64,000 bases of DNA from Macrostomum lignano. Lineage: Eukaryota. The notes under the pieces are model-generated. The model made no database searches. It had not been told where the DNA came from and was given only the letters and a program-made list of their open reading frames with translations. A program made the translations under genes and the position numbers. Each line of letters begins with the position of its first letter. The first letter of the stretch is position 1. The DNA lies in assembly GCA_002269645.1 (NCBI GenBank), contig NIVC01003331.1:1-64000 (forward strand), given 5' to 3'. Positions 10,001 to 52,634 of the stretch are shown in pieces.

Positions 10001-13000
10001 ATGATTTTTATATGACGCTTCAATGATTGTTTACATGACGCTTCTATGATTTTTATATGACGCTTCTATGATTGTTTACATGACGCTTCTATGATTGTTT
10101 ACATGACGCTTCTATGATTGTTAACATGACGCTTCTATGATTTTTTACATGACACTTCTACGATTGTTTACATGACGCTTCTATGATTGTTAACATGACG
10201 CTTCTATGATTGTTTACATGACGCTTCTATGATTGTTAACATGACGCTTCTATGATTGTTTACATGACGCTTCTATGATTTTTATATGACGCTTCTATGA
10301 TTTTTTAAATGACGCTTCTATGATTTTTGCATGACGCTTCTATGATTGTTTACATGACGCTTCTATGATTGTTTACATGACGCTTCTATGATTTTTATAT
10401 GACGCTTCTATGATTGTTTACATGACGCTTCTATGATTTTTTACATGACGCTTTTATGATTTTTTTATATGACGCTTCTATGATTGTTTACATGACGCTT
10501 CTATGATTGTTTACATGACGCTTCTATGATTGTTATTATGACGCTTCTACGATTTTTTACATGACGCTTCTATGATTTTTATATAACGCTTCTACGATTT
10601 TTTACATGACGCTTCTATGATTGTTTACATGACGCTTCTATGATTTTTATATAACGCTTCTACGATTTTTTACATGACGCTTCTATGATTGTTTACATGA
10701 CGCTTCTATGATTTTTATATGACGCTTCTATGATTTTTACATGACGCTTCTATGATTGTTTACATGACGCTTCTATGATCTTTACATGACGCTTCTATGA
10801 TTTTTATATGACGCTTCAATGATTGTTTACATGACGCTTCTATGATTTTTATATGACGCTTCTATGATTGTTTACATGACGCTTCTATGATTGTTTACAT
10901 GACGCTTCTATGATTTTTTACATGACGCTTCTATGATTTTTTTAATGACGCTTCTATGATTTTTATATGACGCTTCTACGATTTTTTACATGACGCTTCT
11001 ATGATTTTTATATAACGCTTCTACGATTTTTTACATGACGCTTCTATGATTTTTTACATGACGCTTCTCTGATTTTTTTAATGACGCTTCTATGATTGTT
11101 TACATGACGCTTCTATGATTTTTTACATGACGCTTCTCTGATTTTTTTAATGACGCTTCTATGATTGTTTACATGACGCTTCTATGATTGTTTACATGAC
11201 GCTTCTATGATTTTTTTACATGACGCTTCTATGATTTTTTACATGACGCTTCTATGATTGTTTACATGACGCTTCTATGATTGTTAACATGACGCTTCTA
11301 TGATTGTTTTACATGACGCTTCTATGATTGTTAACATGACGCTTCTATGATTGTTTACATGACGCTTCTATGATTTTTACATGACGCTTCTATGATTGTT
11401 TACATGACGCTTCTATGATTGTTTGCATGACGCTTCTATGATTTTTAATGACGCTTCTATGATTTTTTGCATGACGCTTCTATGATTTTTATATGACGCT
11501 TCTATGATTGTTTACATGACGCTTCTATGATTTTTACATGACGCTTCTATGATTTTTATATGACGCTTCTATGATTTTTTACATGACGCTTCTATGATTG
11601 TTTACATGACGCTTCTATGATTGTTTTATGACGCTTCTATGATTGTTTACATGACGCTTCTATGATTTTTAATGACGCTTCTATGATTTTTTACATGACG
11701 CTTCTATGATTTTTACATGACGCTTCTATGATTTTTATATGACGCTTCTATGATTTTTTACATGACGCTTCTATGATTGTTTACATGACGCTTCTATGAT
11801 TTTTACATGACGCTTCTATGATTTTTATATGACGCTTCTATGATTGTTTACATGACGCTTCTATGATTTTTATATGACGCTTCTATGATTGTTTACATGA
11901 CGCTTCTATGATTGTTTACATGACGCTTCTATGATTTTTATACATGACGCTTCTATGATTTTTACATGACGCTTCTATGATTTTTACATGACGCTTCTAT
12001 GATTTTTTACATGACGCTTCTATGATTTTTAATGACGCTTCTATGATTTTTATACATGACGCTTCTATGATTGTTTACATGACGCTTCTATGATTTTTAC
12101 ATGACGCTTCTATGATTTTTTACATGACGCTTCTATGATTGTTTACATGACGCTTCTATGATTTTTACATGACGCTTCTATGATTGTTTTACATGACGCT
12201 TCTATGATTGTTTACATGACGCTTCTATGATTGTTTATATGACGCTTCTACGATTTTTACATGACGCTTCTATGATTTTTTACATGACGCTTCTATGATT
12301 TTTTAATGACGCTTCTATGATTTTTACATGACGCTTCTATGATTTTTTACATGACGCTTCTATGATTTTTTTACATGACGCTTCTATGATTTTTACATGA
12401 CGCTTCTATGATTTTTACATGACGCTTCTATGATTTTTTACATGACGCTTCTATGATTTTTATATGACGCTTCTACGATTTTTACATGACGCTTCTATGA
12501 TTTTTTACATGACGCTTCTATGATTTTTAATGACGCTTCTATGATTTTTACATGACGCTTCTATGATTTTTTACATGACGCTTCTATGATTTTTTAATGA
12601 CGCTTCTATGATTGTTTACATGACGCTTCTATGATTTTTACATGACGCTTCTATGATTTTTACATGACGCTTCTATGATTGTTTACATGACGCTTCTATG
12701 ATTGTTTACATGACGCTTCTATGATTGTTTACATGACGCTTCTATGATTGTTTTACATGACGCTTCTATGATTTTTATATGACGCTTCTATGATTTTTTA
12801 ATGACGCTTCTATGATTTTTACATGACGCTTCTATGATTTTTTATGACGCTTCTATGATTTTTTACATGACGCTTCTATGATTTTTACATGACGCTTCTA
12901 TGATTTTTATATGACGCTTCTATGATTTTTTACATGACGCTTCTATGATTTTTTTACATGACGCTTCTATGATTTTTTACATGACGCTTCTATGATTTTT

Positions 13001-15668
13001 TACATGACGCTTCTATGATTTTTTACATGACGCTTCTATGATTTTTTACATGACGCTTCTATGATTTTTTACATGACGCTTCTATGATTTTTATATGACG
13101 CTTCTATGATTTTTACATGACGCTTCTATGATTGTTTACATGACGCTTCTATGATTTTTACATGACGCTTCTATGATTTTTACATGACGCTTCTATGATT
13201 GTTTACATGACGCTTCTATGATTTTTATACATGACGCTTCTATGATTGTTTACATGACGCTTCTATGATTTTTACATGACGCTTCTATGATTGTTTACAT
13301 GACGCTTCTATGATTGTTTACATGACGCTTCTATGATTGTTTACATGACGCTTCTATGATTGTTTACATGACGCTTCTATGATTGTTTAATGACGCTTCT
13401 ATGATTGTTTACATGACGCTTCTATGATTTTTATGACGCTTCTATGATTTTTAATGACGCTTCTATGATTTTTACATGACGCTTCTATGATTTTTATATG
13501 ACGCTTCTATGATTGTTTACATGACGCTTCTATGATTTTTTACATGACGCTTCTATGATTTTTTACATGACGCTTCTATGATTTTTTTACATGACGCTTC
13601 TATGATTTTTCATGACGCTTCTATGATTTTTACATGACGCTTCTATGATTGTTTATGACGCTTCTATGATTGTTTACATGACGCTTCTATGATTGTTTTA
13701 CATGACGCTTCTATGATTGTTTACATGACGCTTCTATGATTTTTATATGACGCTTCTATGATTTTTTACATGACGCTTCTATGATTGTTTACATGACGCT
13801 TCTATGATTTTTACATGACGCTTCTATGATTTTTATATGACGCTTCTATGATTGTTTACATGACGCTTCTATGATTTTTATATGACGCTTCTATGATTTT
13901 TTACATGACGCTTCTATGATTGTTTACATGACGCTTCTATGATTGTTTACATGACGCTTCTATGATTGTTTTATGACGCTTCTATGATTTTTACATGACG
14001 CTTCTATGATTTTTTACATGACGCTTCTCTGATTTTTTTAATGACGCTTCTATGATTGTTTACATGACGCTTCTATGATTGTTTACATGACGCTTCTATG
14101 ATTTTTATATGACGCTTCTATGATTTTTACATGACGCTTCTATGATTGTTTACATGACGCTTCTATGATTGTTTAACATGACGCTTCTATGATTTTTTAC
14201 ATGACGCTTCTATGATTGTTTACATGACGCTTCTATGATTGTTAACATGACGCTTCTATGATTGTTTACATGACGCTTCTATGATTGTTAACATGACGCT
14301 TCTATGATTGTTTACATGACGCTTCTATGATTTTTTACATGACGCTTCTACGATTGTTTACATGACGCTTCTATGATTGTTTACATGACGCTTCTATGAT
14401 TGTTTACATGACGCTTCTATGATTGTTTACATGACGCTTCTATGATTGTTTAACATGACGCTTCTAGGATTGTTTACATGACGCTTCTATGATTTTTATA
14501 TGACGCTTCTATGATTTTTATATGACGCTTCTATGATTTTTTACATGACGCTTCTATGATTTTTTACATGACGCTTTTATGATTTTTTATATGACGCTTC
14601 TATGATTTTTTCCATGACGCTTCTATGATTGTTTACATGACGCTTCTATGATTGTTATTATGACGCTTCTACGATTTTTTACATGACGCTTCTATGATTT
14701 TTATATAACGCTTCTACGATTTTTTACATGACGCTTCTATGATTGTTTACATGACGCTTCTATGATTTTTATATGACGCTTCTATGATTTTTTACATGAC
14801 GCTTCTATGATTGTTTACATGACGCTTCTATGATCTTTACATGACGCTTCTATGATTTTTATATGACGCTTCTATGATTGTTTACATGACGCTTCTATGA
14901 TTGTTTACATGACGCTTCTATGATTGTTTACATGACGCTTCTATGATTTTTTAATGACGCTTCTATGATTTTTATATGACGCTTCTATGATTTTTTACAT
15001 GACGCTTCTATGATTTTTATATGATGCTTCTATGATTTTTTACATGACGCTTCTATGATTGTTTACATGACGCTTTTATGATTTTTATATGACGCTTCTA
15101 TGATTTTTTACATGACGCTTCTATGATTGTTTACACGACGCTTCTATGATTGTTTACATGACGCTTCTATGATTGTTAACATGACGCTTCTATGATTTTT
15201 TACATGACGCATCTATGATTTTTATATGACGCTTCTATGATTTTTTAAATGACGCTGCTATGATTTTTATATGACGCTTCTATGATTGTTTACATGACGC
15301 TTCTATGATTGTTTACATGACGCTTCTATGATTTTTTAAATGACGCATCTATGATTTTTATATGACGCTACTATGGTTTTTTATATGACGCTTCTATGAT
15401 TTTTACATGACGCTTCTATGATTGTTAACATGACGCTTCTATGATTTTTTACATGACGCATCTATGATTTTTATATGACGCTTCTATGATTTTTTAAATG
15501 ACGCTTCTATGATTTTTATATGACGCTTCTATGATTGTTTACATGACGCTTCTATGATTGTTTACATGACGCTTCTATGATTTTTTAAATGATGCATCTA
15601 TGATTTTTATATGACGCTACTATGATTTTTTATATGACGCTTCTATGATTTTTACATGACGCTTCTTT
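1002..15668. repeat. Satellite array, 22-23-bp monomer ACATGACGCTTCTATGATT(T/GT)TT, ~14.6 kb (about 640 copies by length divided by unit)
   Basis: Continuous head-to-tail monomers with a variable T-run and TTGTTT/TTTTT variants. No spacers. The ORF track reports no ORF within it. Confidence 0.98.
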
Positions 15669-16279: not shown

Positions 16280-17692
16280 GTGGAACTCCTCCTTCGGAGG
16301 AGAAAGGGGAAGAACTCCCATCACCGGAATTCCATTTCCTGAAATATCCATCAACTGAAATTCCATGCCTTGAACCCTATCTTCCAAATCGTCTCCAAAT
16401 TCTTTACAAAACCTTTAAAAGACCATAGCTCAAAGACTCTCACGTCTATCATATCTCCTCTCTACTCTCTTCGCTATTATCGTGACTCTCTTCTCTCTTC
16501 TCTCTCATATCTTATCTCTACCCCTACTCCCTTATTTATCTCTTCTCCCTCGTCTTTCGTCTGTACCCTCTCCTGTCTCCTGTCTCCTCTCTTCTCTCTT
16601 ATCTCTCCCTCTTCTCTTCTCTCTCATATATCATCTCTACTCACTTATCTATCGTCTCTCTTAACCCTCTCTCTCTCTTCTCTTTTCTCTTCTCTCAGCT
16701 CTCATTTCTCATATCTCAAATACGCTCTCACACTCTACTTTCTTGTCTCCCATCTTTCTTTCCTTCTTTCCACTATCCCCTGTCTCTTCTCTTCTCTCTT
16801 TTCTATCCTCTCCATTCTCTCTTTTCTCCTCTCCTTGCTCCTTTCATCTTCTCCCTCTCTTCTCTAATCTCTAATCTCTAATCTCTTCTCTCTTATGTTC
16901 TCACGCATCTCTTCTCATCGCATCTCTCATCTCTCCTCTCCGCACTACTTTCCTCTCTTAACTCTCTCATCTATGATCTTTCATCTCTCTCCTCTCTCCT
17001 CTCTCTCTTCTCCTTTCGCTTCTCTCTCCTTTCTCCCCTCTTTTCTCCTCTCTTCTCTCTCCTCTCTCCCCTGCTCTCTCATCCCTCATCCCCTCATCTC
17101 ACTCTTTCTTTCTCCTCTACTCTTCCCTCTCTTCTATTTCCTCTGTACGCTCTTATCCCTCATCTATTCTCTCTCCTATTATCTCTCTTGTATCCCTTTG
17201 CTATCTCATATCTCCCCTCTCATCTCCTCTCTCCTCTTCTCTTCTCTCTCCTTCGTTCCCGCCTTACTCCCCTTTTTTCTCCCATCTGTCATGTCTAATC
17301 TCTCCACTCATTTCTACTCTGTTTTCTATCATCTCATCTCTCTTCTCTTTTCATTCTTCTCTTTACTCTCTTCTCTAACTGATTGAAGATGCCAAATCCA
17401 TCAAGATCCTCTCCGCGCGAAGCAGAAATCCTGTCCGTGCAACTGAAAACCATCGAAATCCTCTCCGTGAAACTGGACTCCTTCGAAATCCTCTCCTTGA
17501 AACTTAAATCCATCAAAATGGTCTCCATAAAACAGAAATCAATCATAAATTATCTCCACGAAACAGAAATTCTCTCCGTCAAAATTAAAACATTGAAATC
17601 GTCTCCGCTAAACTGGACTCAATCGAATTTTTTCCGTCAAACAACTCAACTCCGGATTCATTGGTTAGGGTTAGGGTTAGGGTTAGGGTTAG
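16280..17692. repeat. Composite repeat element: perfect hairpin, ~1-kb C/T-rich tract, gaaatcctctccgtgaaact sub-repeats and (TTAGGG)4
   Basis: Hairpin CTCCTCC-TTC-GGAGGAG at 16286-16302. Pyrimidine tract at ~16440-17380. Sub-repeats at ~17420-17640. GG(TTAGGG)4TTAG at 17663-17692. Confidence 0.65.
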
Positions 17693-17699
17693 AACTACG

Positions 17700-19024
17700 C
17701 ACAGGTTTGTGTTAAAAGGCACTGATAAGAATATTGAACTAATTGAATCAATTCATTGCGCAACCGATTTCACAGTCAGTCAGTACCAGTCTCAGTTAAA
17801 GTTAACAAAAACATTGCGCAATCTAAATCAACCCTCCAATACACAGCAGCAGTGAGAAGTTGAACCCTCCCCCCAACTTTATCTATTACGTCTCGCAAAA
17901 CTGAGTACAATCTTTGCAGAAAGTTAAAAGTATGGAAATAGTTTTTCAAATGCTGTGCTTTTTCTTTTCATATTTAAAGCAAACAACTTATATCCCCGAA
18001 CTCAGCGTTGCAAGATCTTTCCAGCAATATAAGTTTCTCTTCTCAAAGTTTAAAACTCGAGGAACAGTTAGCGTTTGAAATTTACCGATTTCCCAACTGC
18101 TTGCTAGAGAAGCTCGCAAGTTTATTCATTGAAATTCACTGCCCAGCTAATACACAGGGCCGATAATAAAACCAATTGAATCTCGGCACAGTTCTATCTG
18201 TTTACAACAGCTATGTACACTCAGCCCAAGCCCAACCCCCCGTTCCGGGGGAATCATTAAATTTAACTCAACCCCTCAACTCGCGGGGTTTTATTTGCAT
18301 TGAACGCAGAACACGCGCACCCACCACCCCTCAATACACAGCGGCCCGCGAGCGGAGGTTGGGGTGGCTATTTTTACAAACTGGCTGAAGCCCCAGGCAG
18401 AGTAGCAAAAGAAGGTTATTGGGGGTCAAAAAGGCAGTTTTCTGCTTTTTTTGAGGATCTTAGAAATTAAAATTTCAGAATTAAAATAGCCTATAGCCGA
18501 CCTCGGATAATTTCCAATCTTCCCAACCTTAAAGCAGAAATTAAGGTGCAAGTTTTCCCGTTTCTTACTTGCAGAGCGCAATGTACACTCTGTGATGAGT
18601 TAAAAAATCAAGCCATCCATTCTCGCGCAGTGTGCACCTCCACCCCTTTTTAACACTGAGCAAGTAGGCCGCCAATTCTCAAGTGCCGGCGACCCTCCCC
18701 CAGCTGAAATGAAATACACTGCAGAGATAGGAGAAAAGTTGTGGCGCAACCATACAAAATAGCGTCAAGTGGGAAGTCCATGGAATGCGATATATAGACA
18801 TCTGGTCTGGCTGTCTGGTTTGTGCTGTTTTCTGCTTTTTTGAAGCACTTAAAATTGAAATTTGAAAATGAATTTTAAATTGTAGCATCGTCGGGACATT
18901 TGACATGTTTTGGTACCGGTTTGAAAGTTGAGTTGCAAGAATCCTAGGAGGAGATCGTCGACAAACCCGGCCCACCGGCCCACCCTACCACCGGACCACG
19001 ACGTCAGCTTTAGTATATAGAGGA
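17700..19024 (-). mobile_element. Second non-autonomous Helitron-like element; 5-prime end at 19024
   Basis: The minus strand reads A|TCCTCTATATACTAAAGCTGACG, followed by short ccggcccacc repeats and a ctaggaggagatcg motif. The left part is similar to the 15.7-16.3-kb element. The left boundary is approximate. Confidence 0.45.
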
Positions 19025-19499
19025 TTCGAAATGCTCTTATAACAGTTATGGTCTAATTTCAGACTGAAATTTTGATTGTTGTCACAGTGGAAACAATTCT
19101 TTTACTGTGCAACTTGCACATTTAATGACAGGCACAAAGGCAGGTTTATGAGTTCCAGTGGGACAAGACATGGCGGTGAATAAAATAAAGTGGAGGCCTT
19201 GCTGTGTACACTTTTGGTTTTGCTATGTACACCATTGCATGCTGTTTATTGTAGATCATTGCAGACTGTTTATTCCTTTACAACAGTTTATTCTGTGTTT
19301 ATTAGACTGTTTATTCAATGACACAGTTCCAAAGCTACTTTACTTTGTTGCACCAGTTTTAAGAACAATTCACAAGCACTTTCTTTTGTGTGACTCTGTT
19401 TTTTTTCAAATTGATCCTTGGACATTTTTCTTAACAATTGATAAGCAAAACAGTGCAAAATGACTATGTGTGATTGCAGTGGTTTGCAGGTTGCTCATT

Positions 19500-19990
19500 A
19501 GTTTAGTTGCACGCTTAGAGTGCTAGGGTGCTCATTGATCAAGAATTTCTAGCCAAAGTATATGCTAGACTGCCAGAAGTCCAATGGACATATCCGTTAA
19601 AAGTCACAATGGTCGTTTAGATAGTTGGGATGGTGCAGGAAGTATAGTCAGTGCAACAAGGAGTCTCACATTGCTCATTGGTAAGGCTTGATCAAGAATT
19701 TCTAGCCAAAGTATATGCTAGACTGCTAGAAATCCAATGGATACATCCGTTGAAGGTCCCGATAGTTGTCCAGATGGTCGGGATGGTGCAGGAAGTATAG
19801 TGAGTGCGACAGGTAGTGTCATGTTGCTCATTGGTGAGGCTTGATCAAGAATTTCTAGCCAAAGTATATGCTAGACTGCTAGAAGTCCAATGGACATATC
19901 TGTTGAAGGTCCCAATGGTCATCCAGATGGTCAGGATGGTACAGGAAGTATAGTGAGTGCAATTAGTTGTAGGATGCTTATTGACAAGAT
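19500..19990. repeat. ~152-bp tandem repeat, 3 copies
   Basis: gatcaagaatttctagccaaagtatatgctagactg at ~19537, ~19690 and ~19842. Confidence 0.9.
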
Positions 19991-20235
19991 TTCATAATAA
20001 ATATTTGACCAATTTTTTTTCGGATCTTAAATTCCGATGATGTCAGAATATGCTCATTGAATCTCCTGACAATGGTTAACTGTCAGATGCCAGAGACAGC
20101 CAAGGGACTCGCCAGCCGCAAATGCACTGGAGCTCAAGTCGGTGAGGGTCAGTTGGTCAGTCGGTAAATTATTTATTTATAATTAGTATGTATTCTTAAA
20201 TCACTTGGCCCTGTGGCAGAACCTAAGCTGGCGCA

Positions 20236-20680
20236 CTATATAGACAAAAGCAGCATGTAATGATGTTCTGCAATGTGAGCCACCAGTAGAGGACCACTGG
20301 TTGGCTTTGTCTGCAATGGTTCAATAACTCTCTATAGATGGCTTTGATGCGGCATGCAAGTTCTTGACTTTTTCAATGCAGTGGGTAGGAAAATATGAAT
20401 TTCACACTTTAATATATGGCTAGTAGACAGTACTACAATATTCTCAACGTAGGAAGTTGGCTTTCGCATGTTGTCCAGGTAGGTAATCAGATTCATGCCA
20501 GATTCGTTGAAGTCTTTAGAAACTTTAAAAAATTCTGGGTTTATTAGTTTGGTGCATGCCAAAGTGTGGAGTCTTATAGGGTCCTTATAGGGAAAGCAGT
20601 TGGCAAATAGAGTCAAAAAAGCAATTGCTATCAGCAGCAGCATCACCCAAGATGCACCCTAGCCTCTTGCCAATTAAGCG
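20236..20680 (-). pseudogene. OTU-like cysteine protease domain at the C-terminus of the pogo transposase pseudogene
   Basis: GDAAADSNCFFDSICQLL (Cys loop), then a 1-nt frameshift, then DPIRLHTLAC..NPEFFK..YLDNMRKPTSYVENIVVLSTSHILKCEIHIF, one in-frame stop, and LLVAHIAEHHYMLL (His motif). Confidence 0.75.
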
Positions 20681-22543
20681 CAGTTTAGATTTTGCATTCT
20701 GCAATTCAGCCACTGGATTGAGACTTCTAATCTGGGCCATCTTCTGTAGCTGCCACTGCTGTGCTGCTGTGGCCTTGTTTTTTTTCATTTCAGCTAGCAC
20801 TCCTTGGCATTTTAATTGTGCCAATTGTCGATTTCTCGCTTTTGGATTTCTCTTTGACAAAGAACTTCCAGAAACTTTGGGCTGGTCAATTTAGGCATGC
20901 CCGCTTCCCTCGCAATTGAAGGCCGCTGTCGCTTAGGCTGATTAGCTTTTGGCTTAGGCTACAACATTTCAAGATGGTTGTATTGGTGAGCCACTGAACG
21001 TAAAATTTCAAGTGTTGAATTCGGTGAAGACTTTAGAGTCAGAGAGATAGCACTTTGATCGGCATCTAAATCAATGCTAGTGGTGCTCACTAAGCAGCTC
21101 GGTGCCTCGCCATCACCTTAGACAGCTGAGGTGACATTGCTGCTTGGCACCTCGCCATCGCCTTGGACAGCCAAGGTGGCATTGCCGCTCGATGCCTTGC
21201 CATGGCCTTGGGCAGTCATTGTCGCAGTTGCACCCACTTGCTGGCTGGCCAAACTGGAGGCAACATACAACTTGTCATATAATAAGGCTTCTAGGTTGAA
21301 TGGAAAGAGGCCACACACTCGAAACCCAGACTTTACATTGGTAATGGAGATTGACTCAGCCAAAGAAGACAAAAACAGTTGTATAAAGTCCATATTACAC
21401 AGAACTCCAGCTGAATCTAGCCTCGCTTGCTGCGCAATGAGATTGTTCCAAGCAGCCTTAACTGATCAAAAGACTGCAACATCCAAAGGCTGCATTACAT
21501 GCATTGTGTTTGGGACTTGGCCAAAAATGTAGACCTGTTTAATAATTTCAGAATTAATAAATATCTATGAATTGTCAACTGATAGAAGAAAAGATAAAGG
21601 GATTATCAATTAAAACAAGATATACAATACCTGATAGAAAGATCAGAATGAAACAAAATATACTAGCTAGTTTTTTTTACTTTTCAGGAACTCATATAAT
21701 TAGATAGATTACAGTTAAAGCCTGTTTACATTTTCCTTGCTTAGCAGCTCCAACATCTAAGCATTATGTTGCAAATTGTAATTATTGCAAAATAAAATCA
21801 CAGGTCTTCTGATTTTTTTCTACTCTAGGTAGGATAGGAATGTCTCCATGACCCACTTCCAAAACGACTCCCTGGTCAACCAACCTTTCTTTGTCATGGA
21901 ATAGTTGTAAATGTCCGCAACATTATGTCTCTTTCCTGCAAAAACAAAATGCGGTGGCAGCATAGATCACAAGCCTGGATTGTAACCATGATGGTAGCAT
22001 TTTCTTTTCTACTGTCTTAGTGTAAACAAATTTGGATCCCTTTCTAACAACTACTTTGCGGGACTTTCTAGCAAAGTAAGCGGCTGAAGTATCTGCTTCT
22101 TAGTGACTAAATATTGGGTGTAGTTGATCGGTTGAGGTGTCCAGATTGACAGGACACTCTGGTGGCACACAAAGAAGCAGTTTAGCCAACCTTCTGTCAT
22201 CGTCACTTTTTTTACAGTTTTTAAACTGATCTGAGTTGTCACTAAAAGCAGAAATTTTCTTTAGGGCTAGAGAGGCCATCTCCAGGACCTGTACTCTAGT
22301 CATTGGGATATGCTGCCTTTGCATTGCTAATGTCTCAACAAAGACAGCTTCCTCTTTGACTGTGAAAACCTGTTTCTGTGAATTAAAAGGCTTTTGGGGT
22401 TTGTTAGATGAAACCTTCCTTATGTGATAAAGCAAAATTTGATGAAAAACACCAAATCGCTGCACAATGCTCCTATAACTTAACTTTTCACCTGCTTCAA
22501 GGAATGTAATAACAACCTGCACAGCTTCATCAAGGTCCTTCAC
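20236..22543 (-). pseudogene. Decayed pogo/Fot1-type (CENP-B HTH + DDE_1) transposase with one intron and a C-terminal OTU-like domain
   Basis: HTH_psq/Tc5-like N-terminus (LSYRSIVQRFGV..FTVKEE..MTRVQVLEMA). GWLNCF..H and KVVVRKGSK follow, then KENATIMVTIQAC/LPPHFVFAGKR, KKGWLTRESFWKW and RPVILF. After intron 21729-21535 come VPNTMHVMQPLDVAVF*SVKAAW and NVKSGFRVCGLFPFN. Many stops and frameshifts are present, plus an apparent deletion before the first catalytic Asp. Confidence 0.88.
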
Positions 22544-22619
22544 TCAAGATCTTACCTGATTTTAGCCATTAGCCTAGTCTTAAACAAAATTCTAACAGGT
22601 AGACAAAGTATACAGGAAA

Positions 22620-23000
22620 AAATATGCTAAGAAGTAAGCAAAGTAGATAAAGTAGAATAGGCAGTTTAGGTAGGCAAAGTAGATTTAGTAGACAAGGCTA
22701 GTTAAATAGTCAAAGCAGTTTATTTAGATAATACAGTAAGTTATTGTAAATAGGCAAAGTATGAGTAGGTTAAGTAGACAAGGTTGGTTAAGTAAGCAAA
22801 GTAGGTTAAATAGACAAGGTTGTTAAGTAAGCAAAGTAGGTTGTAGATAAGGTTGGTTAATTATAGACAAAATAGTTTATTTAAATAGTACAGTATGTTA
22901 AGTAGGCAAGACAGTCTACATAGGTAGGCAAAGTAGGTTGGGGAGAAAAGGTAGGTTATTTAGGTTAAGTAGGCAAAGTACTCTAAGTTGACAATGTAGC
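22620..23000. repeat. Degenerate short purine-rich repeats (taggcaaagtagg-like) upstream of the transposase, possibly subterminal repeats
   Basis: Recurrent gcaaagtagg, gacaaggtt and taggttaag words. Confidence 0.5.
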
Positions 23001-23332
23001 AAAAGTAAAATATGAGTATAAGTATACAAGCCAGCAAAATTGACTTAACAATGTTTGAAGTGACCTCCAAAAACTTTCAGATTAGCAGTTGCAAAAATGG
23101 TTCGAATGCTGTTGATTTAATGTTTAGAAGGTTTAAGAAAAAAACTAAGTATATCTTATTGCTGGATACATATAGCCAAAGATACTCGCTACAAACTTCC
23201 GGCGCTATTGTTAAAGAGCGAATAAGAATCCTAGGAATGCGCCGCAAGAGTTTCTATTCATTGGCAGTCCGTCGGTGTAAATACAGTGAAAAAACCACTG
23301 CTGTCGCTGTATGCACTAGCTGCTATTAAGAT

Positions 23333-23695
23333 GGCTATTTCTCTGCCTTTGCATATCTTGAAAGCCGATTGACTTACTTAAAGAATTCTTTCTACATCAT
23401 ACATGTATCAGTGTGGTTTAGTAGCCTGTAGAAATTTAGCCGCTAATCTGCTGATCCAGCTTGGCAAATTTGGGTTGGATTTGTTGACTTTCTCCTATCT
23501 AAATACACTATAAGATGGCTCTATTTCTCCACCTTTGCTTATCTTGGAAGCCAATTGACTTACCTAAACAATTATTTCTGCATCATACATGTATCAGTGT
23601 GGTCTAGTAGCCTGTAGAAATTTAGCCTCTAATCTGCTGATCTGGCTTGGCAAATTTGGGTTGAATTTGTTGACTTGTTCCTAACTAGACTCACA
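23333..23695. repeat. ~183-bp direct duplication
   Basis: gatggct..catcatacatgtatcagtgtggt..gtagcctgtagaaatttagc..cttggcaaatttgggttg occurs twice, at ~23333 and ~23514. Confidence 0.85.
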
Positions 23696-24727
23696 GCTGC
23701 TTACTCCTCTACTTTTCTTTTTGTATAAGTATTAGTGCAATAAATTAATAGTAGTTTCAATAAACTACTTAATTCATGCTGCAGAGCTAGCCATCAGGTG
23801 TTTAGAAGGCTTTATGTAAACACAGTTTTTTGGATGAAAAGGTCAAACATATTTTTCCCCCATTTTAGTGAGATATTTTTTTCTGTTTCAAATAGCTGGT
23901 TGAAAGGCAAACCATGCTCTATAAAATGTTATGTTTTTGACAGATTTTAGTTTACTCTTTTAATTGTATATTCTATTTTTTAATTATGCTTCTCCAACAA
24001 GTAGATAAAGCAAATACATTTTTGGCAAAAATGACAATAGTATAGTAAAATGAGAGTATTTTATGCTACTCTTGATTTTCAAATAGAAGTAGGCCTACTT
24101 GTACATTATCACTCATATTGAACTTGAAATCAATAGAAATTATAAATGATAATGCCTATAACCTCAACTCTTGCAGATTTATGAGCCTACTCGTACCTAT
24201 ATAACTAACTCTACTGGCAGAATTGAGAGGTCTAGAAACTTCTGGAGAAACACATGACCAGAAATGTGTGCCATCATGCTTCTTTACAATTACATTGAAA
24301 ACTTGCAGATGCGCACTTTAGAAAAGGAATCAAATTATTTTACCGCATTTTAGGATTATTAGAAATCATTTTTTACAATGTTTTCCTATAGGGCATGTGC
24401 CTGCATGTGAAAAGATATTATTAAGGCTAACAAACATCAAACAGCATTGCAAATTCTCTAAAAAGAAGCTCAAATCATAGATAGGTAGTACAAGTATTGT
24501 AATATACCAGTTTACCACCATTTTTGTTCCTATTCTTCTCTTATTTCTATAATAAAAACTTGAACTTGCACTTCAGCTTATTTTCTTATATCAATAGTCT
24601 ATGTTCTAGATCATCAGAAATGTTTGTCAAGTACAAAGACTTCCTTGATCAAGTAACAAATAAGTTAAATAATCTGGAATATTATATTGGCTGGAATGGG
24701 GTGAAATAGGGTATAAATAAGGTTGCT

Positions 24728-24795
24728 GACATGGTGGCTCTTTAATGTTTGACATGGTGGCTCTTCTATGTTTGACATGGTGGCTCTTTAATATT
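24728..24795. repeat. ~23-bp tandem repeat, 3 copies
   Basis: gacatggtggctctt repeated three times. Confidence 0.8.
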
Positions 24796-26100
24796 CTGAG
24801 GCTGATAATAGCCTGAGGATGATAGAGTCATCTAAAGCAGATAGACAAGTTGTGTGTATGCCTACACACATATCCATGTATGTTTGTGAAGAGTAAGCTA
24901 AGGAGTAAATGGAATAGGCAGAATTGCCTTTTCACTGTTTGTGGAATGATCTTTTCAAAGGCCTTGTGCCATGGTGCCTATAATCCTCCTGCAAATATTT
25001 AAAAAAATTACTAGATCACCATTTGCTCCAATTCAAGACCTGACAGACCTCGAACACAAGCTTTTTTAGTGGCATTTTTATATGCTTGTTTTTCCTTGGC
25101 ACTCAGATGCTTAAATGCTTCACTTAAGAAGGCTATTCTTTGCTTTGAAAAATTATTTGAAAGATAAATATACAAGCATATTCCATACCAAAAGCATTCA
25201 CAATGCTAAAGCAAATCTTACTAGCTGATCTTACTAGTGACACTTATTGGCTCCCTTGGCCTTGATAAACATAGACTAGGCATTGACTTTTCTTTTGTGG
25301 TGACTGCAAATGCCTTTCATTTTGTTAACTATATTCAATATTAATTGATGTCCCTAAAAATATTCATTAAGCTATAACCAATTATAAATAAATTTCTTAA
25401 TACATAAAATGGGCTCATATGACAATATATATCATTCTTCACAATTTTGACAATGATTATTTTTTAACTTGTTGATAGATATAGATATGGTAATATCACA
25501 CTTAATTAAACAAATGTAGCATGACAAGTAGAAGGGGGAGGTTGAAAAGGAGGGAGGCTAATAGATTAGAAAGTGGGTAGATAGGAAAACAGGTGGATGG
25601 GAAAGTGGGTGGATGGGAAAGTAGGTGGATGGGAAGATAGGTAGAGGGGAAAGTGGGTGGATAGGAAAGCAGGTATAAGGCAAGGTGGGTGAATGGGAAG
25701 CAGGGTGTAAGGCAGCAGGACTGGATTAGCAAAGGGTGAGGCATTAAGGCTAGATTAGCAAGGATAGGACAACAAGACTAGATTAGCAAGGGTGGTTAAT
25801 AGGGCTAGCAAGGTAGAGTATTAGGACCAAATTAGCTTGTTGGAATTAGATAAATTATAGAATGAATAGATAGATAGAAATATTCATTGTAAAATTATTA
25901 TACTCGGCTATCAATAGGCCTAGCTATAACAGACATATAACTAGGCCTATATACAGCTCAAATAATTATAGCTATATTTATTTTTTATGGCTGTAGGCTA
26001 GTTTAAGATATTTATAAAATCAAATATAGCTAGGCCTAAAGCTAAAGTATGAATAAAATAGCTAGTATAACATGGGTCTAGATTGTAGCTAGGCTTATGG

Positions 26101-30323: not shown

Positions 30324-30913
30324 ATGAACACTGTACATTTAGATAGCAAACCGGAGCCATTAACTGTCAAAACCAATGCCAATTTAATCGGAAGTAATAG
30401 TAGCACCGCTACTAGCAGTAGTAGCAGTAGTAGCGCATGCAGCAGCGCTTTTAGTAGCGAAGACTCGCCGGCCCAGCAGCAACAGATGCAGCAGTCACCA
30501 AGCATGCCAGCTGCTGTAGGCGAGGCATCCAGAATGGTGTCGGCGCGTTGTGCCGCTATAAATTCTTCCTCAGCCTCTTCGGGCGTAGAATCTCGCACCC
30601 AACGTGGCTTCTCGTGCGCATTTGACGAAGTGTTGGCATCGAATAGGGCTGTTGTGCAAGCGGAAAATGTGCCGGGTAGGAGGGTAAACAACAATGGCGG
30701 ATGTGGCGGTACAGCTGGTAGCGGTTGCTCTAATTCTGGCAATGGTCGCAGCCTGTCACGAAATGGTAGTGCTTGCGGCGCCAATGGTAGTTATTCATTC
30801 ATATTGCCTGACTTGTCAACCTATCCGTTGGAATTTCGAGCCTTTTTGGAGAAGGAACTGTTGGATACGGGGACTCTGGTTAACTTGGAGCAGGCTGGTT
30901 GTTTGAATTGGTG
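30324..30913 (+). CDS. OTUD7: OTUD7/Cezanne (A20-family) deubiquitinase, first identified coding exon (gene 30324-36291, ~708 aa)
   Basis: ATG ORF with a Ser-rich N-terminus ending FILPDLSTYPLEFRAFLEKELLDTGTLVNLEQAGCLNW-W, matching the OTUD7A/B pre-catalytic segment. Donor TG|GTAAGG at 30914. An upstream exon is possible (gcag|caATG). Confidence 0.88.
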
Positions 30914-30959
30914 GTAAGGTTACTTTGGGTTAATTTTGTCTACCATTGGTTAGTAGTAA

Positions 30960-32060
30960 GGGGTAGTCTGACATTGTTACCAGTTTCCTAATGGTAAACT
31001 AGGGATGTAGCCTGACATTGTTACCAGTTTCCTGAAGGTAAACTAGGGATGTAGCCTGACATTGTTACCAGTTTCCTGAAGGTAAACTAGGGATATAGCC
31101 TGACATTGTTACCAGTTTCCTAAAGGTAAACTAGAGATGTAGTCTGACATTGTTACCAGTTTCCTGAAGGTAAACTAGAGATGTAGTCTGACATTGTTAC
31201 CAGTTTCCTGAAGGTAAACTAGGGATGTAGTCTGACATTGTTACCAGTTTCCTGAAGGTAAACTAGAGATGTAGTCTGACATTGTTACCAGTTTCCTGAA
31301 GGTAAACTAGGGATATAGCCTGACATTGTTACCAGTTTCCTAATAGTAAACTAGGGATATAGCCTGACATTGTTACCAGTTTCCTGATGGTAAACTAGGG
31401 ATGTAGCCTGACATTGTTACCAGTTTCCTAATGGTAAACTAGGGATGTAGCCTGACATTGTTACCAGTTTCCTAATGGTAAACTAGGGATATAGCCTGAC
31501 ATTGTTACCAGTTTCCTAATGGTAAACTAGGGATGTAGCCTGACATTGTTACCAGTTTCCTAATGGTAAACTAGGGATGTAGCCTGACATTGTTACCAGT
31601 TTCCTAATGGTAAACTAGGGATATAGCCTGACATTGTTACCAGTTTCCTAATGGTAAACTAGGGATGTAGCCTGACATTGTTACCAGTTTCCTGAGGGTA
31701 AACTAGGGATGTAGCCTGACATTGTTACCAGTTTCCTGAGGGTAAACTAGGGATGTAGCCTGACATTGTTACCAGTTTCCTAATGGTAAACTAGGGATAT
31801 AGCCTGACATTGTTACCAGTTTCCTAATGGTAAACTAGGGATGTAGCCTGACATTGTTACCAGTTTCCTAATGGTAAACTAGGGATGTAGCCTGACATTG
31901 TTACCAGTTTCCTAATGGTAAACTAGGGATGTAGCCTGACATTGTTACCAGTTTCCTGAGGGTAAACTAGGGATGTAGCCTGACATTGTTACCAGTTTCC
32001 TAATGGTAAACTAGGGATGTAGCCTGACATTGTTACCAGTTTCCTGATGGTAGACTAGAG
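30960..32060. repeat. 44-bp minisatellite (~25 copies) filling OTUD7 intron 1
   Basis: Unit agcctgacattgttaccagtttcct(aat/gaa/gag)ggtaaactagggatgt; period 44 (ctgacattg at 30968, 31012, 31056). Confidence 0.97.
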
Positions 32061-32117
32061 ATTTAATATGCTTAGAGTACAAGCAGCTGACGCGTAAGTC
32101 CTCACACTAATACCTAG

Positions 32118-33192
32118 GCACGACCTTGGCCTGTCCCAACGATTGTGGCCTCTGCAAACGAGCGGCGATGGCAACTGCCTTCTACATGCTATCAGTCTGA
32201 GCAGTCTAGGCTTCCACGATCGTCAATTGGTATTCCGAAGCGCGTTGCACGAATATTTGCTGTCTCATAGTGCAGCTGTGTACAGGCGCTGGAGATGGCA
32301 GACAGCCCGGGAGCTGTACCGAGCCACGGGCCTGAGATTAAGCGAGTCGGAATGGCAATCGGAATGGAAATCGTTGCTACAACTGGCTAGCGCCCAGCCT
32401 AAGCAGCAACAACAGCAGCAGATCGGTCAGCAGCATCAGCATCAGCTGGATTCTCTAGAAGAAATCCACGTATTCGTAGCCGCCAATGTATTCCGCCGGC
32501 CCATCATAGTGATAGCCGATCAGTTTGTCAAAGACTCCGAAGGTGACAATTTAGCTCCAATACCGTTTGCCGGAATCTATCTGCCGCTGTTAGAGAAACC
32601 AGAGCATTGTTCTAAGCATCCGGTATTGCTAGCCTACGATGCAGCTCATTTCTCCGCATTGGTTCCCATGGAAACTGCTGTAAACTTGCCCTACGCTGTT
32701 CCATTGTGCTGCTGCGATCTGCACACCCCGCTGCCTCTGCACTTTAGCGCCGATCCCGGGCCGCACTGGAAATGGTCGTCGAAATCTGCCGCTGCGGCTG
32801 TTGTTAACGGCGCTCCAGTGGCGACGCCCGATACAGAAATGGGCGGCAGGCTTCGAGCTAAACTGCTGGCTTCTTATCTGAGATGCTCAACTCTGAGATT
32901 GCCTGTGGCTCCGCCGCAGCCGCTTCCGGCGGCTGTCGCTCAGGCTGCCGTTGCTGCTGTTACTCAACGCCCAGTAGTAGTTGGACTAACTCGTTCGGGT
33001 AGTTCAGTTGGCAATGCGGCGCAGTTGTCTATGGCAACAGTCGGTGCTGTTTCAGCAGACGATAGCGGCTTTGTTGAGTATCAACAGCAGCAGCAGCAAC
33101 AACAGTTGCATTCGCAGTTGCAGCAGAGATCTGCTACTCTGGACTGTCGTAGAATGCGCGGCGGTGTTGATGGATTGTATCCAGGGGGCATG
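32118..33192 (+). CDS. OTUD7: OTUD7-like exon 2: OTU catalytic domain
   Basis: Acceptor ctag|G at 32117 joins in frame to give NWWHDLGLSQRLWPLQTSGDGNCLLHA (catalytic Cys at 32176). Also LEEIHVFVAANVFRRPIIV, PFAGIYLPL and LAYDAAHFSALV (catalytic His). Donor ATG|GTGAGC at 33193. Confidence 0.93.
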
Positions 33193-33196
33193 GTGA

Positions 33197-35758: not shown

Positions 35759-35829
35759 CGTAGTGGATCATGTTATACTAGTACTAGTTTATCGTACTAA
35801 CACCTACCCCTCCCGTTCTTGTTTCCCAG

Positions 35830-36291
35830 TCGCAGGGCCAACAGAACCCCAGCCGATCTCTTGGCCATCAACTGCTCAAAGCCATGCAGCAGCGTCTACC
35901 AATTAGGCGAACAGGTAAATCTAGTAAATGGCCGTCAGTTGCAACGCCAGCTTCATCAGCTGATGCCTCGGTGGCGGACCAGGCGCTATTGGATAGCGCC
36001 TCAACCGGGTTGCTATGCGCCCACCTGGGCGTTACTAATCGACCGCCGCATTTCACTGACGCAGTTAGCAGCTACCTGACCTCGGCTATGGCTCGGTTCT
36101 CACAATTAGACGAATTACAGAAGCGCCGGTCTGCCGAAATTATCGACCAACAAATGCGCCGCTCGGCTCTGGTGCAGTGTGTCGGTCCGAACTGCGACAT
36201 GTTCGCTCGAGAGGAGACCAATTTCCTGTGCTCTCGCTGTTACCAGGACCAGCAGTTGCTGATGAAGCAGATGCTTAATGACGATCATTGA
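35830..36291 (+). CDS. OTUD7: OTUD7-like exon 3 with C-terminal A20-type zinc finger
   Basis: Acceptor tttcccag|TCG at 35829 is in phase 0, with TACTAAC at 35795. RPPHFTDAVSSYLTSAMARF and CVGPNCDMFAREETNFLCSRCY (Cx4Cx11Cx2C). Stop at 36289-36291. Summed exons are 2127 nt = 709 codons. Confidence 0.9.
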   Translation, partial: SQGQQNPSRSLGHQLLKAMQQRLPIRRTGKSSKWPSVATPASSADASVADQALLDSASTGLLCAHLGVTNRPPHFTDAVSSYLTSAMARFSQLDELQKRRSAEIIDQQMRRSALVQCVGPNCDMFAREETNFLCSRCYQDQQLLMKQMLNDDH

Positions 36292-47812: not shown

Positions 47813-47861
47813 ACTATCTGGGCGGATAACACAAGACACGGATATCCGAAAGTATAACATC

Positions 47862-50628: not shown

Positions 50629-50650
50629 GTGAGGCGTTTGGAGTGGGTTA

Positions 50651-51165
<515 letters not shown>

Positions 51166-52140: not shown

Positions 52141-52270
52141 CTGCAATTGAAGTACTTAAAAGTAAAGGACATTTAAATCGACATGAACCTATCGACATCG
52201 ACATAAACTAGATATATTTTTTCATAAAAAGTCATCGCTTAAGAATAATCATTAATCCCCACTTCAACAG

Positions 52271-52591: not shown

Positions 52592-52597
52592 GTTAGT

Positions 52598-52633: not shown

Positions 52634-52634
52634 G

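What the first reader, a model, noticed from the sequence alone, without database searches (positions are those of the whole stretch)
20236..22543. pogo/Fot1-type DNA transposase fused to an OTU deubiquitinase domain
Seen: after the DDE C-terminal motif (NVKSGFRVCGLFPFN) the same frame, reading through two C-to-T-type stops, continues through a linker and PKPK..KRQRP..KLTSPKFLEVL. After a single frameshift it passes through a basic coiled segment into DAAADSNCFFDSICQLL...YLDNMRKP..YVENIVVL..ILKCEIHIF...LLVAHIAEHHY, which has the OTU Cys-loop, helical core and His motifs in the correct order. Established: pogo-family transposases often end in PHD or zinc fingers; OTU proteases are known cargo of Helitrons and viruses, and Ulp1 proteases of MULEs. 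I do not know of a described pogo-OTU architecture. Inference: a transposon family encoding its own deubiquitinase, perhaps to stabilise the transposase or counter ubiquitin-based defence. This OTU is of a different subfamily from the neighbouring host OTUD7, so it is not a local capture.
Basis: partly seen in the sequence, partly recalled or inferred. Interest (0 to 1): 0.8.

Follow-up and report, generated by a model that had tools for sequence, protein, structure and literature searches.

The report
Dead pogo transposase fused to OTU
A decayed, non-functional gene relic in a flatworm genome (Macrostomum lignano) shows that a pogo-type "cut-and-paste" transposase once carried an OTU-type (deubiquitinase-like) domain at its tail; a nearly intact second example from another dataset proves the fusion is real, adding a further transposon group to those known to carry ubiquitin-removing enzymes.

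Summary
On the minus strand, 22569/22543 to 20236 is a collinear pseudogene: HTH, Pfam DDE_1 (37.6 bits), a linker, a basic coil and Pfam OTU (25.5 bits; cut-off 23.3). It is more broken than described, with at least 5 frameshifts and 7 in-frame stops. Two of the frameshifts and three of the stops lie between the DDE end and the OTU His motif.

The fusion is not a chance juxtaposition. An exhaustive search of 1.84 billion proteins found one close relative, P0007 on Logan contig L001. There HTH_Tnp_Tc5, DDE_1 and OTU lie in one 893-codon frame with a single stop, collinear with the window copy (35% identity). Its OTU part models as an OTU fold (OTUD3, TM 0.71-0.76).

Related pogo transposases carry PHD-like or other domains in the same C-terminal position, so the OTU occupies a swappable slot.

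Two deviations are shared by both members. The second catalytic Asp of the transposase is Asn. The acidic residue at His+2 of the OTU is Met, while Cys and His are kept.

No TIRs or TSD were found, so a domesticated gene remains a live rival to a transposon. Transposase-OTU fusions are already known (Ginger1, Helitron). This is a new variant, and the window copy is dead.

The parts
22630..22977 (-). 5' array of about 10 direct copies of TTTGCYTACYTAA-like motif (18/35-bp period), directly upstream of the ORF. It is a candidate subterminal transposase-binding array.
   Evidence: Six matches with at most 1 mismatch, all on the gene strand, against 0.79 expected. Ten matches with at most 2 mismatches. 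TRF arrays. L001 has 7 x 19-bp CGTTGCTTAAYTACTTRAA directly upstream of its ATG. The core TTGCTTA[AYTA]CTTAAC is the same apart from a 4-nt indel.
22555..22569 (-). Possible original start (ATG, MAKIR). It is out of frame with the following HTH region and is followed by a TAA stop.
   Evidence: Inferred only from position relative to the L001 N-terminus.
22223..22543 (-). N-terminal helix-turn-helix region (VKDLDEAVQVV...SAFSDNSDQF).
   Evidence: Aligns to L001 residues 10-120 (27% identity, E 5e-06). There is no Pfam hit on the window copy itself.
22132..22191 (-). Remnant of the Tc5/CENP-B-type second HTH (GWLNCFFVCHQSVLSIWTPQ), reached by a frameshift.
   Evidence: Aligns to GWVNRFLQRHSDLAMRVPQ of L001, which lies inside its HTH_Tnp_Tc5 hit (30.5 bits; cut-off 22.2).
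21730..22114 (-). DDE_1 core, first part. It contains the first catalytic Asp (EADTS, 22099-22085, preceded by stop 22102-22100), VVVRKGSKFVY, LPPHFVF, and ILFCNNYN (21798-21775), where the second catalytic Asp is Asn. It has three frame changes and stops at 21822-21820 and 21759-21757.
   Evidence: Pfam DDE_1 37.6 bits. Alignment A1. Frameshift-aware alignment. Coordinates.
21535..21729 (-). 195-nt AT-rich intervening sequence (GT...AG, 25% GC, multiple of 3, several stops). It is absent from L001 and all relatives. It is a putative intron, or else a later insertion. It is flanked by the 8-bp direct repeat TAAACAGG.
   Evidence: Removing it restores ...SKEN|VYIFGQ..., collinear with QEQVILYGL of L001 without any indel.
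21268..21534 (-). DDE_1 core, second part. It contains VYIFGQVPNTMHVMQPLD (third catalytic Asp, 21495-21481), a stop at 21468-21466, and NVKSGFRVCGLFPFNLEALLYDKL.
20893..21267 (-). Poorly conserved linker. It includes a 45-bp x 2.5 tandem repeat (21094-21228) and stops at 21120-21118 and 20961-20959.
20860..20892 (-). Conserved junction motif KLTSPKFLEVL. It corresponds to NLTSRSTLEFF in L001 and to PTVATSDEFM / PSVVSSQEW in relatives that lack an OTU.
20700..20857 (-). Basic, probably coiled segment, reached by a frameshift at about 20861.
   Evidence: An equivalent K/R/E-rich stretch is present in L001, P0001, P0002 and P0009.
20236..20699 (-). OTU domain remnant. It contains the Cys loop DSNCFF (20632-20615), a frameshift at about 20587, YLDNMRKP (20481-20458), a stop at 20334-20332, the His motif VAHIAEHHYM, and the terminal stop at 20238-20236.
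   Evidence: Pfam OTU 25.5 bits. P0007 match at E 1.3e-13. Columns.

Best explanation
Window 20236 to about 22980 (minus strand) is an old, inactivated copy of a pogo-superfamily DNA-transposon gene in Macrostomum lignano.

The single protein it once encoded ran as follows: two N-terminal helix-turn-helix DNA-binding domains, a DDE_1 (RNase-H-fold) transposase core, a variable linker, a conserved 'LTS..LE' motif with a basic coil, and a C-terminal OTU-family cysteine-protease domain.

Shown:
- The domain order.
- Its conservation in an independent, nearly intact ORF (L001).
- The OTU fold.
- Retention of the OTU Cys and His.
- That related pogo transposases carry other modules (PHD-like fingers, or an unassigned domain of about 90 aa) at the same C-terminal position.

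Inferred:
- The C-terminal slot is a host-interface module.
- In this lineage it was filled by a ubiquitin-directed domain.
- The HTH domains would bring this domain to the element's DNA.
- There it would remove, or at least bind, ubiquitin on the transposase, on chromatin or on repair factors. This would stabilise the transposition machinery or steer repair of the excision site, as proposed for Ginger1-OTU and Helitron-OTU/VTD proteins.

The copy in the window can do none of this. It has at least 7 in-frame stops, at least 5 frameshifts and an internal deletion, and its GC content has decayed (41% against 56% in L001).
For: - Pfam DDE_1 and OTU are both above their curated cut-offs on the window copy.
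- P0007/L001 has HTH_Tnp_Tc5 (30.5 bits), DDE_1 (47.7 bits) and OTU (33.0 bits) in one 893-codon frame with a single TAA.
- A collinear frameshift-aware alignment of the window to L001 gives 241/679 identical residues. Conservation is concentrated in the HTH, DDE, junction-motif and OTU blocks, not in the linker.
- The AF2 model of the L001 OTU (pLDDT 71.8) matches OTUD3 at E 9e-8 and TM 0.71/0.76, then OTUD5, OTUD1 and Otu2.
- Cys and His columns are invariant across 29 OTUs, including both pogo-OTUs.
- Relatives P0001, P0002, P0009 and P0012 share the core and junction motif but end in other domains.
- Related direct-repeat arrays lie immediately 5' of the ORF in both the window and L001.
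- The relative L003 has the same kind of subterminal motif at both ends.
- No intact homologue was found among annotated proteins of M. lignano or any other species except L001. This fits a sporadic, decaying mobile element better than a conserved host gene.
- The relic lies in repeat-rich intergenic DNA.
Against: - No terminal inverted repeats, TA duplication or inverted 3' copy of the 5' array were found.
- There is only one copy in the 64-kb window, and only two members are known at all.
- Both members have Asn at the second catalytic Asp (DN35D instead of DD35D), while six relatives have Asp. The common ancestor may therefore already have been unable to cut DNA.
- Both have Met at OTU His+2, where 27 relatives have Asp/Glu. 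L001 also has Tyr instead of Asp at Cys-3. Protease activity is therefore unproven.
- The source organism of L001 is unknown, as is whether the contig is genomic or a transcript.
- The similarity between the two 5' arrays is short (about 14 nt with a 4-nt indel). A loosely similar array also lies at 25569-25791.
Confidence: 0.58

Rival explanations
1. This is a domesticated gene, not a transposon. A pogo-derived, catalytically dead transposase kept for sequence-specific DNA binding became fused to an OTU domain and served the host as a DNA-targeted ubiquitin-handling factor. L001 is such a gene (or a very recent pseudogene of one). The window copy is a decayed paralogue left after gene or genome duplication in M. 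lignano.
For: - The Asp-to-Asn change at the second catalytic position is shared by two sequences that are only about 35% identical. The ORF of L001 is otherwise almost intact, so the Asn is probably ancestral and was tolerated for a long time.
- Domesticated pogo genes typically show altered triads and added domains (PMC7386202).
- No TIRs or TSD were found.
- The window copy has a GT-AG intervening sequence.
- The OTU active site is also atypical in both members.
Against: - No intact homologue exists in the annotated M. lignano proteome or in any other annotated genome among 1.84 to 5.8 billion proteins. A long-lived host gene should have orthologues.
- L001 carries a nonsense codon.
- Related repeat arrays abut the ORF start in both members, as expected for transposon ends.
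- Transposon genes can also have introns (PMC2836005).
Confidence: 0.27
2. This is a chance juxtaposition. An OTU-bearing fragment (for example from a Helitron, a Ginger1 element or a host gene) landed next to, or was hit by, an unrelated pogo relic. The apparent read-through would then be an artefact of stitching frames.
For: The window copy needs two frameshifts and three stop read-throughs between the two domains. The linker is poorly conserved.
Against: - L001 has the same order and the same junction motif in one open frame from the DDE core to the OTU end.
- The OTU of L001 is by far the closest relative of the window OTU in 1.84 billion proteins.
- No Helitron Rep/helicase or integrase domain was detected.
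- The host OTU nearby is unrelated.
Confidence: 0.04
3. The OTU call is a false positive. The C-terminal segment would be a different papain-like or non-enzymatic domain that happens to contain NCFF and HHY motifs.
For: - The Pfam score on the window copy is only 2 bits above the cut-off.
- A PDB sequence search found nothing.
- The third catalytic residue is missing.
Against: - L001 scores 33 bits.
- A profile including both sequences retrieves bona fide OTU proteins.
- The structure model matches more than 60 OTU structures at E <= 1e-3, with OTUD3 on top.
Confidence: 0.03

Closest known systems
Ginger1 DNA transposons (Gypsy-integrase-like transposase with a C-terminal OTU or Ulp1 domain; Bao, Kapitonov & Jurka 2010, PMC2836005)
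   Same: A cut-and-paste DDE transposase carries an OTU (pfam02338) domain at its C-terminus in one ORF. It occurs in invertebrates, sometimes with introns. The protease slot is interchangeable with another domain (Ulp1/PHD there; PHD-like and others here).
   Different: The transposase here is pogo-type (HTH_Tnp_Tc5 + DDE_1). It is not an integrase with YPYY, H2C2 and GPY/F motifs, and there is no rve-type hit. Ginger1 has defined TIRs and tens of copies, whereas no termini or copy number are known here.
Helitron/Helentron elements encoding OTU and/or VTD deubiquitinase domains (PMC9741609; PMC11417382)
   Same: A eukaryotic DNA transposon protein carries a papain-like ubiquitin-directed domain. 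The proposed role is protecting transposition proteins from ubiquitin-dependent degradation.
   Different: Those are rolling-circle Rep/helicase proteins, not DDE transposases. VTD activity has been shown biochemically, whereas no transposon OTU, including this one, has been assayed.
pogo superfamily transposons and their domesticated derivatives (Gao et al. 2020, PMC7386202)
   Same: It has N-terminal HTH_psq/HTH_Tnp_Tc5-type DNA-binding domains, a DDE_1 core, a 35-residue spacing between the second and third catalytic positions, and a QPLD motif. Its closest sequence relatives are pogo transposases (about 30% identity).
   Different: That survey lists no protease domain in any pogo transposase or derivative. 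The second catalytic Asp is Asn in both OTU-bearing members, a feature seen in domesticated rather than active pogo proteins. TIRs and TA duplication were not found.
Cellular OTUD-type deubiquitinases (OTUD3, OTUD5/DUBA, OTUD1, yeast Otu2) and small stand-alone bivalve OTU proteins (P0008 family)
   Same: It has the OTU fold (TM 0.67-0.76), the GNCFF Cys loop and the C-terminal His-aromatic motif. The P0008 family is the nearest sequence group (22-29% identity).
   Different: Met replaces the conserved Asp/Glu two residues after the catalytic His. L001 also lacks the Asp three residues before the Cys. The domain is fused to a transposase, whereas the bivalve genes are stand-alone.

Membership tests
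pogo superfamily (IS630-Tc1-mariner group) | DDE_1-type RNase-H-fold transposase core | tested here: met
   Pfam DDE_1 scores 37.6 bits on the window copy and 47.7 bits on L001. The cut-off is 22.
pogo superfamily (IS630-Tc1-mariner group) | N-terminal CENP-B/Tc5-type helix-turn-helix DNA-binding domains | tested here: inconclusive
   L001 has HTH_Tnp_Tc5 at 30.5 bits (cut-off 22.2) and a sub-threshold HTH_psq. The window copy gives no Pfam hit, but it aligns collinearly to the L001 HTH region, including GWLNCFF.
pogo superfamily (IS630-Tc1-mariner group) | Intact DDD catalytic triad (DD~35D) | tested here: not met
   The first Asp and the third Asp (QPLD) are present. The second position is Asn in both the window (ILFCNNYN) and L001 (VVLFTNLHD; codon AAC), while six relatives have LFLDGH. 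The spacing to the third Asp is 35.
pogo superfamily (IS630-Tc1-mariner group) | Terminal inverted repeats flanked by a TA (or TAA/TAAA) target-site duplication | tested here: not met
   No inverted partner was found for the 5' array or for any terminus in 17000-26000. L001 is too short at both ends. Decay or truncation could hide the termini.
pogo superfamily (IS630-Tc1-mariner group) | Multiple dispersed copies in a genome | not testable with these tools
   Only 64 kb of the genome is available and it holds a single copy. No eukaryotic genome collection was searchable.
OTU cysteine proteases (Pfam PF02338) | Match to the OTU profile above the curated threshold | tested here: met
   25.5 bits on the window copy and 33.0-33.7 bits on L001/P0007. 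The cut-off is 23.3.
OTU cysteine proteases (Pfam PF02338) | Catalytic Cys in the D-G-N-C-[LF]-F loop and catalytic His in the C-terminal H-[FY] motif | tested here: met
   The window has DSNCFF and EHHY. L001 has YGNCFF and EHHY. The Cys and His columns are invariant in 29 sequences.
OTU cysteine proteases (Pfam PF02338) | Acidic or Asn third catalytic residue (His+2 in OTUD-type enzymes) | tested here: not met
   Both pogo-OTUs have Met at His+2, while 27 related OTUs have Asp or Glu. A conserved Glu two residues before the His (EHHY) might substitute. This is an inference and was not tested.
OTU cysteine proteases (Pfam PF02338) | OTU three-dimensional fold | tested here: met
   The AF2 model of the L001 domain (pLDDT 71.8, pTM 0.65) matches OTUD3 4bou at E 9e-8 and TM 0.71/0.76. 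There are 64 PDB matches at E <= 1e-3, and the 50 listed are all OTU-family structures. The window copy itself was not modelled because it is broken.
OTU cysteine proteases (Pfam PF02338) | Isopeptidase activity on ubiquitin or ubiquitin-like modifiers | not testable with these tools
   This needs a biochemical assay.
Ginger1 transposons | Gypsy-integrase-like transposase (YPYY, H2C2 zinc finger, rve core, GPY/F) | tested here: not met
   Pfam finds only DDE_1 / HTH_Tnp_Tc5 and no integrase family.
Helitron/Helentron | Rep (HUH) endonuclease plus PIF1-like helicase | tested here: not met
   No such Pfam hits were found on the window copy or L001. No large ORF of that kind lies nearby.

The most novel reading that the evidence does not exclude
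The pogo-OTU protein may not be a transposase at all. It could be a previously unrecognised kind of domesticated factor. In this reading a catalytically dead pogo transposase (Asn at the second catalytic Asp) supplies sequence-specific DNA binding to the repeat arrays next to its own gene or elsewhere. It would deliver an atypical OTU module (Cys-His dyad, Met at the third position) to defined genomic sites. That would make it a DNA-sequence-targeted deubiquitinase or ubiquitin reader acting on chromatin.
Probability: 0.2. Interest if true: 0.7.

Novelty: new variant of a known kind. Interest (0 to 1): 0.42.

Why it matters
Deubiquitinase-type domains have been picked up independently by Helitrons (OTU, VTD), Ginger1 (OTU, Ulp1), MULEs (Ulp1) and an IS5-like element (USP). 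What they do for the element has never been tested.

A pogo-type example adds a further transposon group. It strengthens the case that handling host ubiquitin or ubiquitin-like marks is a recurrent need of DNA transposons.

L001 is a short, nearly intact ORF of 893 codons. Its OTU domain could be expressed directly, which gives a simple test system.

The shared active-site deviations in both halves also raise the possibility of a domesticated DNA-targeted ubiquitin factor.

For annotation of this window the practical message is modest. 20236-22980 is a dead repeat-derived pseudogene, not a gene.

Tried and rejected
1. Second copy in the window. tblastn and blastn of the element against all 64 kb found none.

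2. TIR/TSD search.
- The repeat finder on 18000-25000, fuzzy motif search, and blastn of the 5' array against both flanks gave only chance-level inverted matches.
- A 21-nt inverted pair at 18079-18099 / 20150-20170 has its CAGTTG ends facing inward and is about what chance gives. I rejected it as a terminus.

3. Protein searches for more members.
- The composite window protein, the full L001 protein and a three-sequence OTU profile were all searched.
- Only P0007 combines DDE_1 and OTU.
- The profile was dominated by stand-alone bivalve OTU genes, which are ordinary single genes with host neighbours.

4. Scans of JGI metagenome contigs and IMG/VR.
- These gave one unrelated small OTU ORF (L004) and nothing else.

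5. PDB sequence search with the window OTU gave no meaningful hit. Structure comparison was needed.

6. Exact look-up of the window pseudogene ORFs in the protein collection found nothing on record.

7. A search for the L001 run accession in papers found nothing, so the source organism of L001 is unknown.

8. An alternative single-frame reading of 22100-21960 (ERDPNLFTLRQ) was produced by tblastn and the DP alignment. I rejected it in favour of the frame giving IFSH*EAD...VVVRKGSKFVYTKTVEKK, which matches the conserved pogo motif in six relatives.

9. The idea that the 195-nt intervening sequence is a TSD-flanked insertion was considered. Removing the insert plus one TAAACAGG copy breaks the frame, whereas GT-AG removal restores exact collinearity. 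An intron is therefore preferred but not proven.
Full report
**Observation.**
A frame-corrected conceptual protein for 22543-20830 hits Pfam DDE_1 (E 2.2e-09, 37.6 bits; cut-off 22). One for 20857-20239 hits Pfam OTU (E 2.1e-05, 25.5 bits; cut-off 23.3).

**Damage in the window copy.**
The copy is more damaged than described.
- I ran a frameshift-aware protein-to-DNA alignment against the intact relative found later and also read the frames by hand.
- These give frame changes near 22198-22221, 22110, 22001-22017, 21961, 20861 and 20587.
- In-frame stops lie at 22102-22100, 21822-21820, 21759-21757, 21468-21466, 21120-21118, 20961-20959 and 20334-20332.
- There is also a deletion of roughly 27 residues between the second HTH and the first catalytic Asp.
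- The path from the DDE end to the OTU His motif therefore crosses two frameshifts and three stops, not one and two.
- The TAA at 21120 is a C-to-T change of CAA. This is shown by the adjacent copy of a 45-bp internal tandem repeat.

**Is the linkage real?**
There is no second copy in the window.
- Searching the composite protein against 5.8 billion clustered proteins found only pogo-type transposases at about 29% identity, none with an OTU.
- An exhaustive HMMER search of 1.84 billion representatives with the OTU part alone found just two proteins.
- The better hit is P0007 (E 1.3e-13, 35% identity over query residues 17-205). It has both DDE_1 (38.6 bits) and OTU (33.7 bits) in one predicted protein.
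- Its contig, L001, is a 3191-bp Logan assembly of run SRR30276804. It carries a single reading frame of 893 codons (nt 142-2820) interrupted by one TAA.
- The whole conceptual protein hits HTH_Tnp_Tc5 (30.5 bits), DDE_1 (47.7 bits) and OTU (33.0 bits).
- The window copy aligns collinearly to it from the N-terminal HTH to the last residues (LLVAHIAEHHYMLLLSI against LRVAHIPEHHYMPLLPI).
- 241 of 679 aligned positions are identical. Conservation is concentrated in the HTH, DDE core, a junction motif (KLTSPKFLEVL / NLTSRSTLEFF) and the OTU, and is low in the linker.
- Two independent, strongly diverged sequences with the same order and junction rule out a chance juxtaposition or an independent OTU insertion.

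**The OTU domain.**
An AlphaFold2 model of the L001 domain, built from a 29-sequence alignment, has mean pLDDT 71.8 and pTM 0.65.
- It matches OTUD3 (4bou, E 9e-8, TM 0.71/0.76), then OTUD5/DUBA, OTUD1 and yeast Otu2. There are 64 PDB matches at E <= 1e-3, and the 50 listed are all OTU-family structures.
- In the alignment the catalytic Cys (NCFF) and His are invariant, including in both pogo-OTUs.
- Both pogo-OTUs have Met two residues after the His, where all 27 relatives have Asp or Glu. L001 also has Tyr instead of Asp three residues before the Cys.
- The domain is therefore a true OTU with a Cys-His dyad but without the usual third residue. Whether it cleaves or only binds ubiquitin is open.
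- Its nearest sequence relatives are small stand-alone OTU genes of bivalves (22-29% identity), which sit among ordinary host genes.
- The host gene next door in the window (OTU 56.3 bits at 32143-33237, zf-A20 at 35884-36291) shows no significant similarity (E 0.68). The OTU is not a local capture.

**The transposase.**
The closest relatives (P0001, P0002, P0009-P0012) are pogo-type proteins with HTH_psq, HTH_Tnp_Tc5 and DDE_1.
- In the eight-sequence alignment the first catalytic Asp and the third (QPLD) are present in the window copy and L001.
- The second is Asn in both (window ILFCNNYN, L001 VVLFTNLHD, codon AAC), while all six relatives have LFxDGH-type Asp.
- L001 is otherwise nearly intact and the two sequences are only about 35% identical. 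The Asn is therefore most simply ancestral.
- This is the strongest argument that the lineage may not have been an autonomous transposon.

**A modular C-terminus.**
After the DDE core, the relatives share a motif (PTVATSDEFM, PSVVSSQEW) and a K/R/E-rich stretch equivalent to the junction motif and basic coil upstream of the OTU. They then end differently.
- P0009 and P0012 end in a Cys/His-rich PHD-like finger. The Pfam PHD hits are sub-threshold (14-17 bits).
- P0001 and P0002 end in an unassigned domain of about 90 residues.
- The OTU therefore occupies a C-terminal slot that this pogo clade fills with different, probably chromatin- or host-directed, modules.

**Cis elements.**
Directly upstream of the window ORF lies an array of about ten direct copies of TTTGCYTACYTAA (22630-22977). 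All are on the gene strand, with six matches at up to 1 mismatch against 0.79 expected.
- L001 begins inside an array of seven 19-bp repeats, CGTTGCTTAAYTACTTRAA, which ends 8 nt before its ATG.
- The cores are the same apart from a 4-nt indel.
- A relative without an OTU (L003) has a different 15-17-nt motif repeated at both ends in inverted orientation, as expected for subterminal transposase-binding sites.
- I could not find an inverted 3' counterpart, TIRs or a target-site duplication in the window. L001 is too short to show its ends.
- A loosely similar array lies 2.6 kb further upstream, so the array evidence is suggestive only.

**Intervening sequence.**
Between ...LLSKEN and VYIFGQ... 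the window has 195 nt (21729-21535) that L001 and all relatives lack.
- It begins with GT and ends with AG.
- It is 25% GC and a multiple of three in length.
- Its removal restores exact collinearity.
- I read it as an intron. It is flanked by the direct repeat TAAACAGG, so an insertion that supplied splice sites cannot be excluded.

**Source.**
A 545-aa ORF of the window (43401-45038) clusters at 90% or more with PAA85476.1 of Macrostomum lignano. The window is therefore from that flatworm or a very close relative. The element lies between a 14.6-kb 22/23-bp satellite and the host OTU/zf-A20 gene.

**Comparison with known systems.**
- C-terminal OTU or Ulp1 domains on a DDE transposase are described for Ginger1, and OTU domains for Helitrons (PMC2836005).
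- Helentrons carry VTD and OTU deubiquitinase domains. Their proposed role is protecting transposition proteins from degradation, and no transposon OTU has been assayed (PMC9741609).
- The systematic survey of the pogo superfamily lists no protease domain. It shows that domesticated pogo genes often have altered triads and extra domains (PMC7386202).
- Full-text searches found no pogo-OTU description.

**Verdict.**
The finding is genuine. It is a new variant of a known theme, transposase plus deubiquitinase-type domain, in a superfamily where it had not been reported.
- The copy in the window is a dead relic.
- I favour a decayed transposon copy (0.58) over a pseudogenised paralogue of a domesticated gene (0.27).
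- The shared Asn at the second catalytic position, the atypical OTU triad and the missing termini keep the second reading alive.
- Interest is moderate. The main value is the nearly intact L001 ORF as a test object for why transposons carry ubiquitin-directed domains.

Noticed in passing
window 1024-15666: A 14.6-kb satellite of about 650 copies of a 22/23-bp unit (ACATGACGCTTCTATGATTTTT). It is 91% matched and strongly strand-asymmetric (AT skew about -0.35).
   Followed up: partly
window 17663-17692: A perfect (GGTTAG)x5, i.e. a TTAGGG telomere-type hexamer, lies interstitially between CT-rich low-complexity DNA and the element.
   Followed up: no
window 21535-21729: A 195-nt GT-AG, 25% GC intervening sequence lies inside the transposase core. 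It is flanked by the 8-bp direct repeat TAAACAGG (21728-21721 and 21541-21534). This may be an intron created by duplication or by an insertion that supplied splice sites.
   Followed up: partly
window 19535-19962 and 23327-23687: The relic is bracketed by two unrelated tandem repeats: 153 bp x 2.8 (88% matched) just 3' of it, and 186 bp x 2 (89%) just 5' of its repeat array.
   Followed up: no
window 25569-25791: A 16/32/48-bp tandem array (GAAAGTAGGTGGATGG on the + strand) has a core (CCTACTTTC on the - strand) loosely resembling the 22630-22977 array. It is unclear whether they are related.
   Followed up: partly
window 30324-36291 (+): A host gene has an OTU domain (32143-33237, 56 bits) and an A20-type zinc finger (35884-36291), i.e. 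an OTUD7/Cezanne-like architecture. It is unrelated in sequence to the transposon OTU.
   Followed up: yes
window 49410-54436 (+): Exons of a TRAF-like gene: a RING finger (49410-49811) and a MATH/TRAF domain (54092-54436). An SIYL-coding microsatellite (about 50700-51170) lies in between.
   Followed up: partly
window 46979-47891: A tandem repeat is open in all three + frames (units such as GEIRKHLQCPGGDQKALAMSKGRSESTCNVQ). It is probably a minisatellite, not a gene.
   Followed up: no
window 59429-60680: Arrays encode LPVCLNELLIL on one strand and LNTPEEGLTVY on the other, another minisatellite giving long spurious ORFs.
   Followed up: no
L003 41-75, 441-503 and 3201-3274: A related pogo element without an OTU (P0009, with a PHD-like C-terminus) shows a 15-17-nt motif (TAGTGTTTGACACTT) repeated at both ends in inverted orientation. 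This is a clear example of subterminal repeats in this clade.
   Followed up: partly
L004 492-2218: A metagenome contig has a 167-aa stand-alone OTU ORF (GDGNCFF) downstream of a 394-aa ORF with a Cys/His-rich nuclease-like region. It is unrelated to the pogo fusion.
   Followed up: no
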